This document shows, one piece after another, positions 52,101 through 61,536 of a stretch of DNA of 64,000 bases (within the stretch, counting starts at the first letter, position 1; each line of letters begins with the position of its first letter). The notes beneath the pieces are model-generated. The model did not search any database and had not been told where the DNA came from. It saw only the letters and a program-made list of their open reading frames with translations. The translations under genes were made by a program, and so were the position numbers. Source of the DNA: Perkinsus chesapeaki ATCC PRA-425 (Eukaryota; Protista; Perkinsozoa); NCBI GenBank assembly GCA_013115145.1, contig JAAPAO010000041.1, forward strand, positions 45,685 to 109,684, given 5' to 3'.

Positions 52101-54536
52101 CATTCCGTGGTGACAGCCGTCCCATTGACTTCGCCGATGAGGCTCCCCCGGCCCCTCTGGTCAGTCTATCTGTAGCAAGCACTAGCTTGGTACGACAACC
52201 CGGCAGTGGCTCGGCTGGTGGCCTCAGACGTCAGACCAGCAAGGGTATGATGGGCCAACGGCAGCAAGGTGGTGGTCATCAGCACATCTCTAGTGGTGAT
52301 TGGCGCAAGGAAATGCTCGGTCCACAAGCCCTAAGAGAGAAGTACAACCGGCAGCAATCTCGACAGCAATACAAACGTTCGAGTGCCCCAGTGGTGCCGC
52401 TGAAGGTCACCGAGCATGGTTACAAGGTTGGATCCAGTCTAGAGGAGATGTCCCCCCAGGACAAGCTGCATAGGCAAGTGATGTCCAACCTTAACCGTAT
52501 CACTGCTGAGAACTTTATGCAAGTCACTGCTAGCTTGGCTGAGCTGGATGTAATATTATCAACTCTCGTTCGGTCGACCCGCGTATTATTCTTTGTTGTT
52601 TCAGATTGATGAAGGATGGAAGCTTGAGCTGGTTGTTCGTACCATCTTCGACAAGGCCATACAGGAGAGTTACTACTGCGAGATCTACTCTGATATGTGT
52701 ATGCAGCTGAGGCGTGTCCTGCCCGAGTTTGAGGGGGATGACAGCAGCAAGCCAATGACCTTTACAAGAGCTCTGATCACCAAATGCCAAGAAGAATTCG
52801 AGGCATTACCGGTGGACTTGGATCCGACTCCTGAGGAGAGAGAGAAGGCCAACGGTGATGCTCAGGAGCTTGAGATCATCCGGTCCAAGAAGAAGGAGCG
52901 TATCTTGGGTAACATGAAGTTCATTGGTCAACTTTTCCTGAGGCAGCTACTAAGCGTGAAGGTTATTAAGGAGGTTGTGAGCCAGTTGGTGTTCCGATCT
53001 AATGAGCCTGAAGAGCACTATATCGAGTGTGTCTGCATACTTCTTCAGAACATTGGCTCAACATTGGACCAAACTGAGCGTGGACGAGCCCTTTGTACGA
53101 CATTCTTGGGCCGCCTGAGAGAATTTAAGAGCTTGAACTACCCTAGCCGACTGAAGTTTATGATTCAGGATCTCATTGATAATAGGGCTAGAGGCTGGAA
53201 AGATAGACAGGGTAATCCTGTTGGTGGTAGAAGCAAGAATGCGGTAAAGGCGGTCACCATACAGGGCCAAGAGGACAGCAAGCGACAGGCTAAGGTTGAA
53301 GAGGCAAAAAGGAAGATGGATGAGTTGGCTATTGAAAAGAGAGAGCAGAAGGAGGCCAAGGAGAGGGAGTTGCAAGAGGCTAGGGCCTTCAAGGTGGATA
53401 AGTTCAAGAACTCTAGGGACTACTTCCACGAGGACGGTGACCTCAATTCTTTCCTCAAGGACGTCACTGAGATGGTTCACAACGATCCCGGTTGTCCCTA
53501 TAAGATGGCCGAAAATCTGGTCAATTGGGGCGCTGAGGATCCCCGAAAGGCTCCTAAAGATGCTGAACTTCTGGTGGAGCTCGTCCGGCACGGTGCAGTT
53601 CCCTTCAAGACCCTCAACGTTGTCTTACGTGGCTTCTTGGAGGTCATGGATGAGGTGGCTGTCGATTTCCCAAAGGCACCAGAGTTTTACCATCGCCTAT
53701 TTGCTCTCTTGCTCACAGCTGACTACTCGGTTGACGGTGGTCCCGATGAATTTGATCCACAGCTCGTGCTCTGTTGGAAGGTTCTAGGCTCTGATGATCG
53801 ATCATTTGACTTGGCCATTAAGATTCTAGAGCAAGTAAAGCACATTGCAGGGGTTCCTGGTGTAGAGAAGGCCCTACACGACTTGAAGCCACTAATGAGG
53901 AAGATGAAGCAGACAGATGAGGCCGGTCTGGACAAGCTACTGGACCAGGCTGGTCTTCTAAAAGATGAGACTGATAGTTTGATCGACAAGCTCAACAGCG
54001 CTCTGAAGAATAAAGATTTCGACGCAGCGACTCGGCTGGTTACTGAGGACGCCCCGGGTGATTTACTCGGAGGTAAAAATGCTTTATTTGAACGGCGGGT
54101 GATAGCAACCCTTATCTCTAACCTTCGAGCAGCATGGGCTCGAGACTCCTGGACGTCGCGGCTCTCCCCTGCCGGGAGTCTGCTTCGGACAGTGTGTGGT
54201 ACTGGCACCGAAACTGGCGTTAGCAGCCCCAATAATAGGGAACTTCACAATCAAAAACAACTTGTGGACTCAGTTGCGAATGCTGTATACGATGCTCGGC
54301 TACCAGTTAAGGACGTAGTTGGTGTTTTCCAAGCCTTCCTTGACATGGGACTGCTACGACAAGTGGTGCTTCAGAATTGGTATTCTCAAGCGTCGTCAGA
54401 TACCGGTGGTCAAGAAGCTCGCAAATTTGCAGCTGAAGGCGTGAAGCGTGTTCTTGCTGCTACTCGGAGCAGCGATGGTGATACACCACCTGAAAGCTCT
54501 GCAGGCTCGGTGGTGTCACCATCCCCTTCCCAGTAG
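49172..54536 (+). CDS. EIF4G: Translation initiation factor eIF4G (Pro/Gln-rich N-terminus, MIF4G, MA3)
   Basis: LNRITAENF..IFDKAIQESYYCEIYSDMC..LITKCQEEFE..RILGNMKFIGQLF (MIF4G), MA3-like DYFHEDGDL.., and RKPLTIIDP resembling the PABP-binding site. Confidence 0.9.
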
Positions 54537-56400: not shown

Positions 56401-56482
56401 TAATAATATATTGTTAAATAGACTGTTGAGTTGTGCATATACTACGCCAATAGGGGAAGGTGATGATCAGATAGCTTCCATT

Positions 56483-57205
56483 ATGATCCCAATACCGTCA
56501 GCTGGTGGCCCGAGGATACCAACCGAGAGTATTCGGCAGAAGTACCGTCCGGCCCTACTGGGCCTCCTCTTCCTTCACATGGCAGTAGCAGGCATCAGGA
56601 TGTAATAGGCTTTTGGATGGCGTCTGAGAGGGTCAGTGCAGTTACCAGCTTCAAATAGTTAATGGTGTAATGAGCTTGCTGTGGGTTGGTGGGGCGTATT
56701 ACGTCATTATCAAGTGGGATATGATGCTTCATTACATCACAATGGTTGGCTTCCTATTCGGCTTCAATGGGGTAACAGCGGCCTTCACAGTACTGCTGTC
56801 TGTGATTAACTCTTTTAGTTCGTCCATAGCCTTTATTTGGTGGAGCGGCTTACCAAGACAAAGATGATACCGTTCTTCGCGTTCCCTCTGGAGGACTCGT
56901 TACTCATCGCTCAACCCATTTTAGACGCTCTAGTTGCATTCGTCTGTTGGAGGGTAGCAACCACCGCTGCTCACTTGAGCATTACTGGTGCCGATCAGGT
57001 CTATGAGGCTGATAAAAACATGGAGGAATACGTTCCACCATCGCGGTTGGGCAGCCGGACGTACGGCAGCAGCTACACGGTAGCTGGGGGGCGGGAAATG
57101 TAATGGGCTCATATGGTCAACCCTGCAAATCAGGCTCCTGGGCCTTCCTTCACAGCATTCTCCGGTCGAGGCTCTCGGTTAGGGGATGACAAGGGGGGTG
57201 TTTAG
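56483..57205 (+). CDS. Small multi-pass membrane protein with C-terminal SHP box (p97/Cdc48-binding motif)
   Basis: Hydrophobic segments. A phase-0 intron at 57080-57133 joins GSSYT|APGPSFTAFSGRGSRLGDDKGGV*, an SHP-like FxAFSGxGxRLG tail. Confidence 0.65.
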
Positions 57206-57298: not shown

Positions 57299-60200
57299 AT
57301 GGTAGGCAGCTCTCCTGAGATAGCCGAGCTCCCCTCGTGTGACCAATCTGTAGCACTGCAGCCATTACCAGTGATAGACCCAGGCCAGGACGGTGTAGGC
57401 AAGGGTGTGGCCATCGCGGTATAGTAGTATGGGTGGTAGATACTTGTCGGCTCCCCCACTACCTTCGATGAGCGTATTAAGAATCAGAGCAGCTCCACCG
57501 GACATCCAAACCTCCTGGCTCAGTACTCCCAGCTGGCCGAGTCCTATCGGTACTGGCGTGCAGTGCGAGGGGACGGCAACTGCTACTATCGAGCCTTGGC
57601 CTATGGCTTCGTGGAACACTCGGCGCTGTTTTGCCCGGAAATGCTGACGAGTCTTCTGAATAAACTGGCTGGGATGTCGGAGAAGGGCCGGCAGAATAGC
57701 ATGTTTCCAGGTAATAAGGGGATGGTCAGTGTTGTGGTCGGCAGCTCATGGTCCAGGCTCCTACAGGGCGCTGTCGATCCTGCTGCCCTCCTGGCAGACA
57801 CGGCTCATGGCCTATAGAGGAAATGAGGATAAGGAGAAGGCAGTGCTTATGGAGGTAGCCCCTGTGGTAGTGGTAGGGGAGTCCTTTGATTAGATCCATA
57901 AAGCATTCAATACCCCCGCGATAGACCAGGCCTTCGTAGCGGCCATACGCCTTCTGGTAGCCGACTATTTAGCAGTTCACAAGTCAGAGCCCTGTACGGA
58001 CAGTGCAGATGCCGATTGCTCCTTCACTTGGGACCAGTGGGCCTATGGCATGATGGACGCTGGTAGGCTGTAGGGTTTGGAGCAAGCCTACTGTTCCAAG
58101 CAGGCATCGATGGCCCCGGAGGCTTCGTTGACTCGGCAGTCCTCAGAATGGGAGAGGATGCCTCTGATCTTGTACAGGCAGCTGCACCGAGGGCGCTGCA
58201 CTGTTGTGTCAGAATTACAATGGTTCACAGGTAGCAGTGTCTGATGCTGGGCGATGCTTCTATCCGGATTTAGGGACCGGACGGCTCTGCAAAATATCGA
58301 CTACGGCAGCGCGTGCCCAGTAAGCCTCCAGGCCACCAGGCTCGGGTGTACCGCATCTCACTCAGACCCCACAAGTCCATCTGCTCTTCCAACCTGGCCA
58401 TTACGAACTTCTAATACCCAAGGAGCCCGAACGGTACAGCGTCCTGCCTATAATGGAAGATGCAGCATTGGTGCCGAATGGAGTGCCGGTCCAAGGGCCT
58501 CCACAGCCCAACTCGGCGGCCAATGAGTTCGAAGGTTTCATGCAGCAGGTAGCCGCCATCACCGCCGCACCACTTATCTCAACGGTCTGCCGTCCTTCAG
58601 GTGCTGTCGAAATACCACACCCTTTGGGGTCAGGCCAGGTACCTTAGTGGGGTCCTAGACCAGCTCCTGCCCCGATTGGATGCTCACGCTAGCCCCAACA
58701 TAGACACCAGCCCTGCCGATGCTCGAACAGAGTTCACTGAAATGCGCAATACACTGAAGGTGGGCTCAAGGCGGTGTCCTCTAGTAGGCAGGATGATATC
58801 TTTACAGAATATGATGGAAGCACAGCGACAGCTATGTGCCATGCCAGAGGACCCAATGGACGAGGCAGCAGCTGCACCACCGCCACCACCACCGACTTTA
58901 GACGGAAATGACGATGACCAGTACCCCATGCCGAGGTATGCCTTGCGGGCTCCATTGAACTAGCTGGACGAGCGGCTGCAGATACTTGTCGGCCCTTCGT
59001 GAAATGTCCCAAGTGGCTCCGCCACCTGATGGAGGCATCAGTCTAAAGGTGGAGGACGGTACCGAAGAGGCTTTGATGGACTGGCCTGAGCTGCAAAACT
59101 CAACACTTCCTGCTACCACAGCTGATGGCATTTTTGTATGCAGCTTGTGTAAAAAAGATGGTCGTATTGGAGACCAGGAAGGAGTTCGAGCACCATGTGG
59201 TGACAGAGTCCACCAGGAATGCCTTCGGCAGTATATCAGCGGTGTGATGGAGAAAGAGAGTATCCCCCTCCAGGATGTCCGGTGTTGGCAGCATCATCGA
59301 AGGTACGGCAGGTCTAGGCGCCGAGACTCTGCTGTCCCGTGTTATGATAGCTTATGGTGAACCCCTGTTTAGGTTCGGCCTGGCATTCCTAAAGGCCAAT
59401 ATGCAGGAGCCAGAACAAAAGGCTGACGATACCGACATGCAGTCCGACGACACTGGTGCAGCCACAGCTGACGAGCCCGAACACGAGGAGACTGCTGAAA
59501 CTTGTCCAGTGTGCCGTCGGAGTGTCCAAAAGGAAGATCTTTCAGTCACGGTAAAGTGTGGCTGCCACTACCACAAGGCATGTCTCAAGGATAGCGTAGA
59601 AGCCTCTATTAAAGCCGGCATGGCCCCAGCCGAGATAGAATGCCCCGAACATAAGGGAAAGAGGTGACCAACACTCCATTCCTTCTGATATACAGCTTGT
59701 CGCAGACTGGGCGCTGCCTTCCTGGAGTCTACAGTGCCTGAGGCCCTCGAGCCTATACGCTCTGTTTGGGGAGGATTCTCCTCCCGTGTTGCCGCAGCAG
59801 CTGGTGCCAGCGGGAAGGCCGCCTCCTCAGGTGAGCTCACGTAATCCACCATGCGTCGATATCCAACCTCGGCAGGCCCACCGCGTGGCGGCTCTCATGT
59901 GCCGGCTAGCAACGCGCCTTCCCATCAAAAGGTGAGCAATTAGCAGTATGCTGCTCTCCATGCTCCTATCAGGTCGAATCAGTGAAGGCCCCAATGCCAT
60001 CGCGAATGGCTCCCTGGTCCGCAGGGTCAGCCAGGTGTGATGCCTGTCGCGATACCCTGTTAAGTGCTGATAGTGCTCGTCTTCCATGTCGGCATCGATT
60101 CCATCAACGCTGTGTCGCTGATGCCTTCACCAAACAAATCACTGAGAATAGCGATGGACTAAAGTGTCCCATTTGCCGTGAAGCCGTTCCTATCGAGGCT

Positions 60201-60728
60201 AACGATACACTGCTCAAGAGTTGCTTGGATCCTGGCGCCTACTACAAGCTGCATTCCTTTCGCGCCCCGCCGCGAGTAGTGCCCCCTGGCAAGCCCTCTC
60301 GGAGCCCTGATATGAGCAAGGCCACTACAAATGACAATAGCAATCTCAGGCAGAAATTCGATCGTGGTTGGCGCCCGTGTCCCAAACACTGCGGGTATCT
60401 TGGAAATTTTCCCAAGTCCGGCCATCCCGAATCCATAAAATGCCTATGCGGTTATGAGTACTGTAGCGGCTGTGGTGTAGACGAGCATGTCATCGCAGCG
60501 CATGATGGTCGATGGCACCGACCCTCGTGCCCTTACTTCGAGAAGTACTCGGCCTTCAAAGGATCACCTCATGCATCTTCCCAATGCCCACAGTGCACAC
60601 AACTCCATCGCTGCTGTCCTTTCCCCAAAAGCGATGGTTATCCTGATAAACTAATGCGATCACTACTGACCGGCCCACGTCCCGAAATGGAGCACCCTCC
60701 GAGGCCAGCTCCGTGGGCACGGGGATGA
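57299..60728 (+). CDS. Otubain-type OTU deubiquitinase fused to three RING-like fingers and an IBR-like Cys-rich domain
   Basis: RAVRGDGNCYYRALAYGF (catalytic Asp/Cys, ~57570) and LLFQPGHYELL (His, ~58400) continue in frame into downstream exons. GT-AG introns at 58585-58633, 58936-58981, 59303-59372, 59664-59705 and two more keep one frame to stop 60728. Confidence 0.8.
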
Positions 60729-60868
60729 AGTGCCACTAACAACAGTGCAACTGTTCTGTACTGACTTTCGTTATACTTGTTTCTATCGTGTCCATATTAA
60801 CATCGTTGCGTACTCAGTATGATGGGACTCGACTCCACAAGTTTGTTCGGGCTGAAACTAGCACTTGA

Positions 60869-61401
60869 TCATTTATCATCATAAAAAGGTTCATAAGCTC
60901 CTCTCGCAGCTCCTCGAGGCTTTGGAATGGCAGAACTTTTCGCCAGGAATTCATCATACTCTTTATTCCTATGCTGATCGTTGAATCTAAATTTAATCAT
61001 CAAAAACAGTACAACTGCCGTTGCCAAAGTGATACCGCCGACGATCATACTTTGTCGCCTAAAAGACAACATTCAACCAAACTGTTCCATAAATTGTCTC
61101 ACTGATATGATATCCTTTGGGGATGCAATGACCTATAATAAGACGGTGTCCCTGGCTTTCCTCGGGTATGGATGCTTCCCCCTCCTCCTTTATAACATGC
61201 TGGATTCTTAATGTAAGCGTCGTAAGCCACCTGCTTGGTATGGGTCCAGCTCTCGCTCACTTTTGCTCCAGTATCGGTTCTCTTCAAAGCATTAACCTTC
61301 TCCTTTACCGAGTCCGGCACTTTAACGCATCCTCGAACTCGCCTCGCCACCGCTTCTATAGTATGGCCCCCTATCTTCGGGTATCTTATTTTTATCCTCA
61401 T
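60869..61401 (-). CDS. Small hypothetical single-pass membrane protein
   Basis: Basic N-terminal exon joined (YYR|RQSM) to IVGGITLATAVVLFLMIKF TM helix and a short tail. Start uncertain. Confidence 0.5.
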
Positions 61402-61536
61402 AAAGGAACTTATCCTTACTAGCCGAACATACGGTGCTTGGGGGCAAGTGAATGATAACATACAACTCAACACAACCGTCAGTGTGAGAATGACCCACCT
61501 TTACGATGTTGTAAAAAATACTGAATAATAATGATC

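What the first reader, a model, noticed from the sequence alone, without database searches (positions are those of the whole stretch)
57299..60728. Putative ubiquitin-editing enzyme: otubain DUB fused to 3 RING-like fingers + IBR-like domain
Seen: an otubain-type OTU with intact GDGNC and GHY motifs whose His exon runs on in frame. A manual splice path then reaches three RING-like units (CSLC..CGDRVHQEC..CWQH; CPVC..CGCHYHKAC..CPEH; a complete RING-H2 CDAC..CRHRFHQRC..CPIC) and a Cys-rich CPKHC..CLCGYEYCSGC..HDGRWHRPSC block. Established: otubains are normally stand-alone ~270-aa DUBs that also inhibit E2~Ub, and A20 is the classic DUB+E3 editor. No RBR RING2 GCNHM-type catalytic Cys is visible. 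Inference: a chain-editing or E2-regulating enzyme in a parasite lineage.
Basis: partly seen in the sequence, partly recalled or inferred. Interest (0 to 1): 0.8.

Follow-up and report, generated by a model that had tools for sequence, protein, structure and literature searches.

The report
Otubain fused to a dead RBR ligase
This is one 14-exon Perkinsus gene encoding an apparently intact otubain deubiquitinase fused to the remains of an RBR ubiquitin ligase; dinoflagellate relatives keep the ligase complete, but Perkinsus has lost its IBR domain and active-site cysteine.

Summary
A hand-built model of 14 exons and 13 GT-AG introns (39-70 nt) gives one 941-aa ORF from 57299 to 60728. It aligns end to end with Perkinsus marinus XP_002778068.1 (964 aa, 63% identity) and with the P. 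olseni locus.

The OTU-to-RING bridging exons are 74-85% identical, against 76% for the OTU domain, so one protein is far likelier than two.

The same collinear architecture is found in at least 13 other proteins. Those that carry an organism name are dinoflagellates. It is: otubain, two RING1-like fingers, RING1-IBR-RING2, and a conserved C-terminal Cys extension. Several of these proteins are complete ORFs from transcriptomes.

All non-Perkinsus full-length members carry the motif E-C-D-H-V-T-C there. The three Perkinsus species have Pro, Ser or Ala at the Cys position and lack the whole IBR. The domain is nevertheless the best conserved part of the last exon (77% identity, synonymous sites saturated).

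Most likely function: an active otubain deubiquitinase carrying a non-catalytic, RBR-derived scaffold. A true DUB-plus-E3 editor is less likely here.

No paper on this fusion was found, and no RNA data exist for this organism. The scan holds two untested notes of OTU-plus-RING genes elsewhere in this genome.

The parts
57299..60728 (+). Whole coding region, 14 exons, 941 aa. Exons: 57299-57394, 57440-57710, 57757-57854, 57894-58062, 58104-58230, 58274-58319, 58366-58548, 58601-58759, 58808-58935, 58982-59302, 59373-59663, 59706-59830, 59876-59931, 59973-60728 (TGA).
   Evidence: Hand-built model with 13 GT-AG introns of 39-70 nt and one open frame. End-to-end 63% identity to P. marinus XP_002778068.1. 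Collinear tblastn hits on the P. marinus-like contig L001 and the P. olseni locus L002.
57461..58428 (+). Otubain (Peptidase_C65) domain, aa 40-290, split over exons 2-7. Asp77 and Cys80 (57581-57583), His281 (58399-58401), Glu283 (58405-58407).
   Evidence: Pfam Peptidase_C65 38.2 bits on exon 2 alone, and 13.6 bits on exon 7 at the profile's last 16 positions. The orthologue P0065 scores 59.8 bits. Best PDB sequence matches are OTUB1, OTUB2 and other otubain-type ubiquitin thioesterases. The OTUB1 motifs DGNC and GHYD align with GDGNC and GHYE.
58429..59138 (+). Conserved bridging region, aa 291-478 (end of exon 7, exons 8-9, start of exon 10). It links the OTU domain to the fingers.
   Evidence: Identity to P. 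marinus by segment: 85% (aa 291-330), 74% (exon 8), 52% (exon 9), 69% (aa 427-477). The OTU domain is 76%. The region is alignable across the dinoflagellate members.
59139..59409 (+). RING1-like unit A, aa 479-545 (spans intron 59303-59372). Ligands read from the motif: C479, C482, C498, D500, H503, C506, C527, H530.
   Evidence: Sub-threshold RING/PHD Pfam hits of 17-18 bits. hhalign against unit B gives probability 97.8% (E 1e-12); against family RING1, 93%. Conserved in all full-length family members.
59503..59751 (+). RING1-like unit B, aa 577-645 (spans intron 59664-59705). Ligands read from the motif: C577, C580, C595, C597, H600, C603, C623, H626.
   Evidence: zf-RING_2 24.8 bits, below the cut-off of 27.3. 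hhalign against RING1 gives probability 90.7%. Conserved across the family.
60036..60260 (+). RBR RING1, here a complete RING-H2, plus its helical extension, aa 712-786. Ligands: C712, C715, C729, H731, H734, C737, C755, C758, followed by Arg759.
   Evidence: zf-RING_2 32.3 bits, above the cut-off of 27.3. The AF2 model has mean pLDDT 85. Best structural match is HOIP RING1: Z 11.4, rmsd 1.7 A, 81 residues, 24% identity. It aligns with RING1 of the canonical family members.
60261..60365 (+). Low-complexity linker, aa 787-821, occupying the place of the missing IBR domain.
   Evidence: In alignments A1 and A2 the IBR columns are gaps in the window and in P. marinus. This is the least conserved stretch, 42% identity. 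pLDDT is below 50 at exon residues 101-110.
60366..60542 (+). RING2 (Rcat)-homologous zinc domain without a nucleophile, aa 822-880. Pro842 (60426-60428) sits where relatives have the catalytic Cys.
   Evidence: Pfam IBR 23.3 bits, against a cut-off of 24.3. Gap-free alignment to the family RING2, where E-C-D-H-V-T-C corresponds to H-P-E-S-I-K-C here. The position is Ser in P. marinus and Ala in P. olseni. 77% identity to P. marinus with dN 0.14 and dS saturated. The only PDB and ESM Atlas structural neighbours are RBR IBR/RING2 domains.
60543..60677 (+). Family-specific C-terminal extension, aa 881-925, with the motif CPxC..C.FP..DGYP.
   Evidence: C205, C208, C215 and D221 (exon numbering) are invariant across 34 sequences. 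The extension is modelled packed on RING2 with mean pLDDT 90.8. No Pfam family matches it.

Best explanation
The region is one protein-coding gene of a Perkinsus species. It is orthologous to P. marinus Pmar_PMAR018507.

The protein belongs to an undescribed family found in dinoflagellates and Perkinsus. In this family an N-terminal otubain deubiquitinase is fused to two RING1-like fingers and a RING1-IBR-RING2 (RBR) ligase that carries a special C-terminal zinc extension.

What is shown:
- The otubain half keeps its catalytic Cys and His.
- In Perkinsus the ligase half has lost the IBR domain and the RING2 active-site Cys and His.
- The remaining zinc scaffolds are under strong purifying selection.

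What is inferred:
- The otubain half works as a ubiquitin thioesterase.
- The protein can no longer form the E3~ubiquitin thioester that defines RBR catalysis.
- The protein therefore acts as a deubiquitinase whose RBR-derived module serves as a non-catalytic docking, targeting or regulatory scaffold. It may bind E2 enzymes, ubiquitin or substrates. It is not a ligase.
For: Single gene:
- One open frame runs across 13 consensus introns.
- It is 63% identical end to end to a 964-aa P. marinus protein and collinear with the P. olseni locus.
- The bridging exons are 74-85% identical, as conserved as the OTU domain.
- A second P. marinus model (P0071) also spans the OTU and RING parts.

Family:
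- Peptidase_C65 plus IBR occur on one chain in P0015, P0003, P0020, P0025, P0027 and P0073, and in P0074-P0080.
- These include complete ORFs from MMETSP and Trinity transcriptomes, and genome-derived proteins of Durusdinium and Breviolum.

Otubain intact:
- Pfam score is above the cut-off.
- The Cys and His align with the OTUB1 catalytic motifs.

Dead RBR:
- The IBR columns are deleted, and the catalytic Cys is Pro (window), Ser (P. marinus) or Ala (P. olseni).
- All 13 other full-length members carry ECDHVT plus an IBR.

Still functional:
- The RING2-like domain is 77% identical with dN 0.14, while dS is saturated.
- The ORF is intact in three species.

Fold:
- RING1 matches HOIP RING1 at Z 11.4.
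- The C-terminal domain's only structural neighbours are RBR IBR/RING2 domains.
Against: - There is no transcript evidence for this organism. No run holds the stretch, and no Perkinsus transcript fragments were found.
- DUB activity is inferred from residues only. The third triad residue is Glu, where OTUB1 has Asp.
- RING1 is a complete RING-H2 with an Arg after the last Cys in two of three species. A RING-type, thioester-independent E3 activity therefore cannot be excluded.
- The scaffold role is inference. No binding partner is known.
- Structural matches for the RING2-like domain alone are weak (Z 2-3, Foldseek E above 0.06).
Confidence: 0.6

Rival explanations
1. A true two-activity editor. 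The otubain removes chains. RING1 has become a canonical RING-H2 in Perkinsus and, perhaps with units A and B, recruits E2~ubiquitin and promotes direct transfer without an E3 thioester.
For: - zf-RING_2 scores 32.3 bits, above the cut-off, and all eight ligands are present.
- The closest sequence matches are active RING-H2 ligases, Arkadia and RNF165.
- Arg follows the last Cys in the window and in P. olseni.
- Units A and B keep a hydrophobic residue (L or V) in the first CxxC loop.
Against: - The residue in the first loop of RING1 is Ile in the canonical members (C-x-I-C). It is Ala in the window and P. olseni and Ser in P. marinus.
- The Arg is Gly in P. marinus.
- The domain descends from an RBR RING1. 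From general knowledge, that type binds E2~Ub without activating direct discharge.
- The loss of the IBR and the catalytic Cys suggests relaxed selection on ligase chemistry.
Confidence: 0.25
2. Two separate products. A stand-alone otubain of about 360 aa ends at the stop at 58645-58647 when intron 58549-58600 is not removed. A separate RING protein is made from the downstream exons, for example after spliced-leader trans-splicing.
For: - Reading through the unspliced intron reaches a TAG at 58645-58647.
- No RNA data are available.
- Perkinsus uses spliced-leader trans-splicing (general knowledge, not tested here).
Against: - The spliced frame is conserved at 74-85% identity on both sides of that intron.
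- The P. marinus-like contig changes reading frame between the same two segments, which is consistent with an intron at that point.
- The whole architecture is collinear in at least 13 relatives, including complete transcript ORFs.
- An unspliced isoform could still exist beside the full-length one.
Confidence: 0.08
3. A decaying gene. The ligase half is a pseudogenised remnant with no function.
For: Loss of the IBR and of the catalytic Cys and His.
Against: - The ORF is intact through 14 exons in three species.
- All zinc ligands of RING1, RING2 and the extension are retained.
- The RING2-like domain is the most conserved part of the last exon, with dN 0.14 and dS saturated.
Confidence: 0.03

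Closest known systems
Otubains OTUB1/OTUB2 (MEROPS C65, Pfam PF10275)
   Same: The N-terminal domain passes the Pfam cut-off. It aligns with the OTUB1 catalytic motifs DGNC and GHY.
   Different: The protein is 941 aa with a large zinc-finger C-terminal half. The third triad residue is Glu rather than Asp (OTUB1). E2 binding and linkage preference are unknown.
RBR E3 ligases (HOIP, HHARI/ARIH1, RNF216, parkin, HOIL-1)
   Same: RING1 with its helical extension superposes on HOIP RING1 (Z 11.4). Every top fold match of the last exon is an RBR ligase. The dinoflagellate relatives have full RING1-IBR-RING2 with a Cys-x-His active site.
   Different: This gene lacks the IBR and the catalytic Cys and His. 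It has two extra RING1-like fingers and a C-terminal Cys extension that has no Pfam model.
Uncharacterised dinoflagellate otubain-RBR proteins (e.g. Durusdinium trenchii 'ubiquitinyl hydrolase 1' P0080, Breviolum minutum P0027, MMETSP ORFs P0020 and P0076) and the Perkinsus orthologues XP_002778068.1 (P0065) and the P. olseni protein P0072
   Same: Collinear domain order along the whole length. The Perkinsus entries are direct orthologues, 63-67% identical.
   Different: The dinoflagellate members keep the IBR and the ECDHVTC active site. The three Perkinsus species do not.
A20/TNFAIP3 and the LUBAC (HOIP)-OTULIN pair
   Same: An OTU-class DUB is combined with ubiquitin ligase function, in one chain (A20) or in one complex (an RBR with an OTU). 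This is general knowledge and was not tested here.
   Different: A20 uses an A20-type OTU and zinc finger 4, not an otubain and an RBR. OTULIN binds HOIP non-covalently. In this gene the ligase part appears inactive.
Chlamydomonas Otu2p (PMC8894339)
   Same: A long multi-domain protein with an otubain domain that has demonstrated DUB activity.
   Different: In Otu2p the otubain domain is C-terminal, and the paper describes no RBR or RING module.

Membership tests
Otubain (Peptidase_C65, PF10275) | Profile HMM score above Pfam's gathering cut-off | tested here: met
   Exon 2 alone scores 38.2 bits against a cut-off of 24.3. The orthologue P0065 scores 59.8 bits.
Otubain (Peptidase_C65, PF10275) | Catalytic Cys in the D-G-N-C motif and catalytic His in the G-H-Y motif | tested here: met
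   Asp77/Cys80 and His281 align with the OTUB1 motifs DGNC and GHY.
Otubain (Peptidase_C65, PF10275) | Third triad residue two positions after the His (Asp in OTUB1) | tested here: inconclusive
   It is Glu283 in all three Perkinsus species and Asp in all dinoflagellate members.
Otubain (Peptidase_C65, PF10275) | Isopeptidase activity on ubiquitin chains | not testable with these tools
   Needs a biochemical assay.
RBR E3 ligase | RING1 of the RBR type with a helical extension | tested here: met
   HOIP RING1 match: Z 11.4, rmsd 1.7 A, 81 residues. zf-RING_2 32.3 bits.
RBR E3 ligase | IBR domain between RING1 and RING2 | tested here: not met
   The IBR columns are gaps in the window and in P. 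marinus. P. olseni also has only a short linker in that position.
RBR E3 ligase | RING2 (Rcat) zinc domain | tested here: met
   Gap-free alignment to family RING2 domains with all zinc ligands conserved; phmmer E-values to relatives reach 1e-23. Pfam IBR is 23.3 bits, just under its cut-off. Fold neighbours are only RBR IBR/RING2 domains, and the matches are weak.
RBR E3 ligase | Active-site Cys (and neighbouring His) in RING2 that accepts ubiquitin from the E2 | tested here: not met
   Pro842 and Ser844 stand where relatives have Cys and His. The Cys position is Ser in P. marinus and Ala in P. olseni.
Otubain-RBR fusion family of dinoflagellates and Perkinsus (unnamed) | Collinear order: otubain, unit A, unit B, RING1, RING2, then the CPxC..C.FP..DGYP extension | tested here: met
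   Full-length alignment with eight members. Motif survey of 21 proteins.
Canonical RING-H2 E3 | Eight ligands in C3H2C3 spacing, plus E2-contact residues (a hydrophobic residue in loop 1 and Arg after the last Cys) | tested here: inconclusive
   The ligands are complete and Arg759 is present. Loop 1 has Ala instead of Ile/Val, and the Arg is Gly in P. marinus.

The most novel reading that the evidence does not exclude
The otubain-RBR family is a natural single-chain writer-eraser, in which otubain's E2-binding ability is wired directly to an RBR ligase. In Perkinsus the writer was switched off. The protein would then work as an E2~ubiquitin trap or brake: three RING1-like docking sites plus an otubain, extending the non-catalytic E2 inhibition known for OTUB1. 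It would therefore be a new kind of pseudo-ligase regulator.
Probability: 0.15. Interest if true: 0.8.

Novelty: new variant of a known kind. Interest (0 to 1): 0.5.

Why it matters
DUBs and E3 ligases usually pair up non-covalently, as OTULIN does with the RBR ligase HOIP. A conserved covalent fusion of an otubain with an RBR ligase gives a natural system for asking how an E2-binding DUB and a thioester-forming ligase cooperate.

Perkinsus supplies a built-in natural mutant. The ligase chemistry is gone, but the scaffold is kept under selection. This separates the catalytic roles of the RBR module from its structural roles.

Perkinsus species are important parasites of oysters and clams, so this divergent DUB, which has no described counterpart outside dinoflagellates and Perkinsus, is also of practical interest as a marker or target.

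The work also corrects two public annotations:
- The P. olseni model is fused to the upstream gene and lacks the last exon.
- The P. marinus model probably retains part of an intron.

Tried and rejected
- RNA evidence. The run search listed only two small runs with the same species label, and they held none of the words. Laying them gave zero depth. Splice junctions therefore could not be confirmed by reads.
- A word search with the P. marinus bridging segment (aa 250-560), aimed at transcript-derived fragments, found nothing.
- A word search with full-length P0065 found only Perkinsus copies and one Logan protein. The family appeared only with the exhaustive search and the profile search.
- Foldseek and VIA-align on the C-terminal domain alone gave no significant match (best E 0.064, best Z 2.9), although nearly all listed neighbours were RBR IBR/RING2 domains. 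This is supporting evidence only.
- dN/dS could not be computed properly because dS is saturated. I used dN and amino-acid identity instead.
- Literature searches were made on otubain+RBR+fusion, Perkinsus+otubain, Peptidase_C65+IBR, otubain+RING-between-RING+alveolate and otubain+dinoflagellate, and I checked the Grau-Bove 2015 ubiquitin-toolkit paper. None describes this architecture. The single Peptidase_C65+IBR hit matched an author name.
- Downstream synteny with P. olseni was not detectable.
- A first acceptor choice for intron 11 (59695) broke the frame. The acceptor at 59705 restores it and matches the orthologue.
Full report
**Observation**

I joined the open segments through GT-AG introns with consensus donors (mostly AG|GTAG or AG|GTGAG) and acceptors. 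This gave 14 exons and 13 introns of 39-70 nt. The result is a single frame of 2826 nt, 941 codons, from the ATG at 57299 to the TGA at 60726-60728.

One first choice of acceptor (59695) broke the frame. The next AG (59705) restores it.

Pfam results on the window's own exons:
- Exon 2: Peptidase_C65 38.2 bits, cut-off 24.3.
- Last exon: zf-RING_2 32.3 bits, cut-off 27.3, and IBR 23.3 bits, cut-off 24.3.
- The two upstream fingers: sub-threshold RING/PHD scores only.

**One gene or two**

No public RNA run holds this stretch, and the two runs offered gave zero depth. The question therefore rests on comparison.

An exhaustive protein search with the last exon found a 249-aa ORF at 60% identity. 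Its 90% cluster contains Perkinsus marinus XP_002778068.1 (Pmar_PMAR018507, UniProt C5L005, 964 aa). My model aligns with that protein from residue 4 to 940 at 63% identity. It is also collinear with a P. marinus-like genomic contig (L001) and with the P. olseni locus (L002).

The segment that links the OTU domain to the fingers is as conserved as the OTU domain itself. Identity is 85% for aa 291-330 and 74% for exon 8, against 76% for the OTU domain. Synonymous sites between the two species are saturated.

The window is therefore from a Perkinsus species other than marinus or olseni (63% and 67% identity). Upstream synteny with P. olseni is kept.

If intron 58549-58600 were retained, the frame would stop at 58645-58647. 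A short otubain-only isoform is therefore possible, but it cannot be the only product.

**The family**

Nine of the longest hits were scanned against Pfam. Five carry Peptidase_C65 at the N-terminus and IBR hits at the C-terminus. A profile search added more, including Durusdinium trenchii, Prorocentrum cordatum and Breviolum minutum proteins, and MMETSP and Trinity ORFs marked complete. Fused transcripts therefore exist in relatives.

A full-length alignment is collinear throughout. The order is:
- otubain;
- a helical linker;
- finger A;
- finger B;
- RING1;
- IBR;
- RING2;
- a C-terminal extension with the motif CPxC..C.FP..DGYP.

Profile-profile comparison shows that A and B are duplicates of each other (probability 97.8%). 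Both are related to RING1 (93% and 91%).

A Vitrella protein (P0070) has the same RBR and extension but gave no otubain hit.

In alignments of 14 and 34 sequences this block aligns without gaps to the family's RING2. There, the non-Perkinsus full-length members carry E-C-D-H-V-T-C, the Cys-x-His active site of RBR ligases.

- The window has H-P-E-S-I-K-C. Pro842 (60426-60428) replaces the Cys, and Ser replaces the His.
- P. marinus has Ser at the Cys position, and P. olseni has Ala.
- The true IBR, about 45 residues in relatives, is absent from all three Perkinsus species. A poorly conserved linker takes its place.
- All 13 non-Perkinsus full-length members checked keep GDGNC, GHYD, the IBR, ECDHVT and the extension.

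The simplest reading is that the losses are derived and specific to Perkinsus.

**Structure**

AlphaFold2 with the 34-sequence alignment gave mean pLDDT 85 for the last exon.
- The Foldseek hits with E at or below 0.001 are all RBR ligases: RNF216, HHARI, HOIP and parkin. HOIL-1 follows just below that threshold.
- Residues 18-101 superpose on HOIP RING1 with Z 11.4 and rmsd 1.7 A over 81 residues.

The C-terminal domain alone gave pLDDT 90.8.
- Its PDB matches are weak (best Z 2.9, best Foldseek E 0.064). Of the 12 chains with Z of 2 or more among 48,161, ten are IBR or RING2 domains of RBR ligases; the other two include EMI1.
- All listed ESM Atlas neighbours carry IBR families.

**Is the degenerate half still used**

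Between the window and P. marinus, the RING2-like domain is the best conserved part of the last exon: 77% identity and dN 0.14, with dS saturated. All zinc ligands of RING1, RING2 and the extension are kept in the three species. This is not decay.

**Mechanism**

Shown:
- The otubain has its Cys and His, aligned to the OTUB1 DGNC and GHY motifs. Glu stands in place of the Asp two residues after the His.
- The RBR module has no nucleophile and no IBR.

Inferred:
- The protein is an active deubiquitinase.
- Its ligase-derived module now serves as a scaffold for docking E2s, ubiquitin or substrates.

A RING-type E3 activity through the RING-H2 cannot be excluded.
- For it: complete ligands, and an Arg after the last Cys in two of three species.
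- Against it: the loop-1 Ile of relatives is Ala or Ser here, and the Arg is Gly in P. marinus.

**Novelty**

The sequences are in public databases as hypothetical proteins or as auto-named 'ubiquitinyl hydrolase 1'. Six literature searches and one targeted reading found no description of an otubain-RBR fusion.

I file it as a new variant of known kinds (otubain, RBR). The Perkinsus form is a pseudo-RBR derivative.

The scan's notebook lists two other OTU-plus-RING notes on other pieces of this genome. I did not test them.

Noticed in passing
window 56411-57103 (+); L002 4001-5416: A small multi-exon gene for a likely membrane protein lies about 195 nt upstream. The public P. olseni model P0072 fuses this gene to the otubain gene. 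P0072 also ends inside the last intron region, so it misses the whole RING1/RING2 exon, which is intact at L002 8180-8902.
   Followed up: partly
window 59303-59372; P0065 residues ~533-548: The P. marinus model carries a 16-residue insertion exactly where the window has its longest intron (70 nt, which cannot be retained in frame). This is probably a partly retained intron in the public annotation.
   Followed up: partly
window 58549-58647: If intron 7 is not spliced, the otubain frame runs on to a TAG at 58645-58647. That would give a stand-alone otubain of about 360 aa as a possible minor isoform.
   Followed up: no
window 57395-59972 (introns): Introns are very short and uniform: twelve are 39-52 nt and one is 70 nt. 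Donors are mostly GTAG or GTGAG, and many are preceded by AG.
   Followed up: partly
P0070 (Vitrella brassicaformis CEM26322.1, 1231 aa): It has the same RING1-IBR-RING2 and C-terminal DDGWP extension but gave no Peptidase_C65 hit. This RBR subfamily may therefore predate its fusion to the otubain.
   Followed up: partly
window 60814-61473 (-): Several minus-strand ORFs start about 100-150 nt after the stop codon, which suggests a convergent neighbouring gene. No similarity to the P. olseni downstream methyltransferase gene was found, so synteny seems to end here.
   Followed up: partly
window 54000-54530 (+): Strong similarity (about 80% at the protein level) to the end of the P. olseni MIF4G-domain gene. 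This shows conserved upstream gene order.
   Followed up: partly
same genome, other pieces (scan notes s1-226108, s1-235058): The scan holds first-reader notes of another otubain plus RING-like finger and of an OTU plus C3HC4 RING elsewhere in this genome. They could be an allelic copy or further DUB-RING fusions.
   Followed up: no
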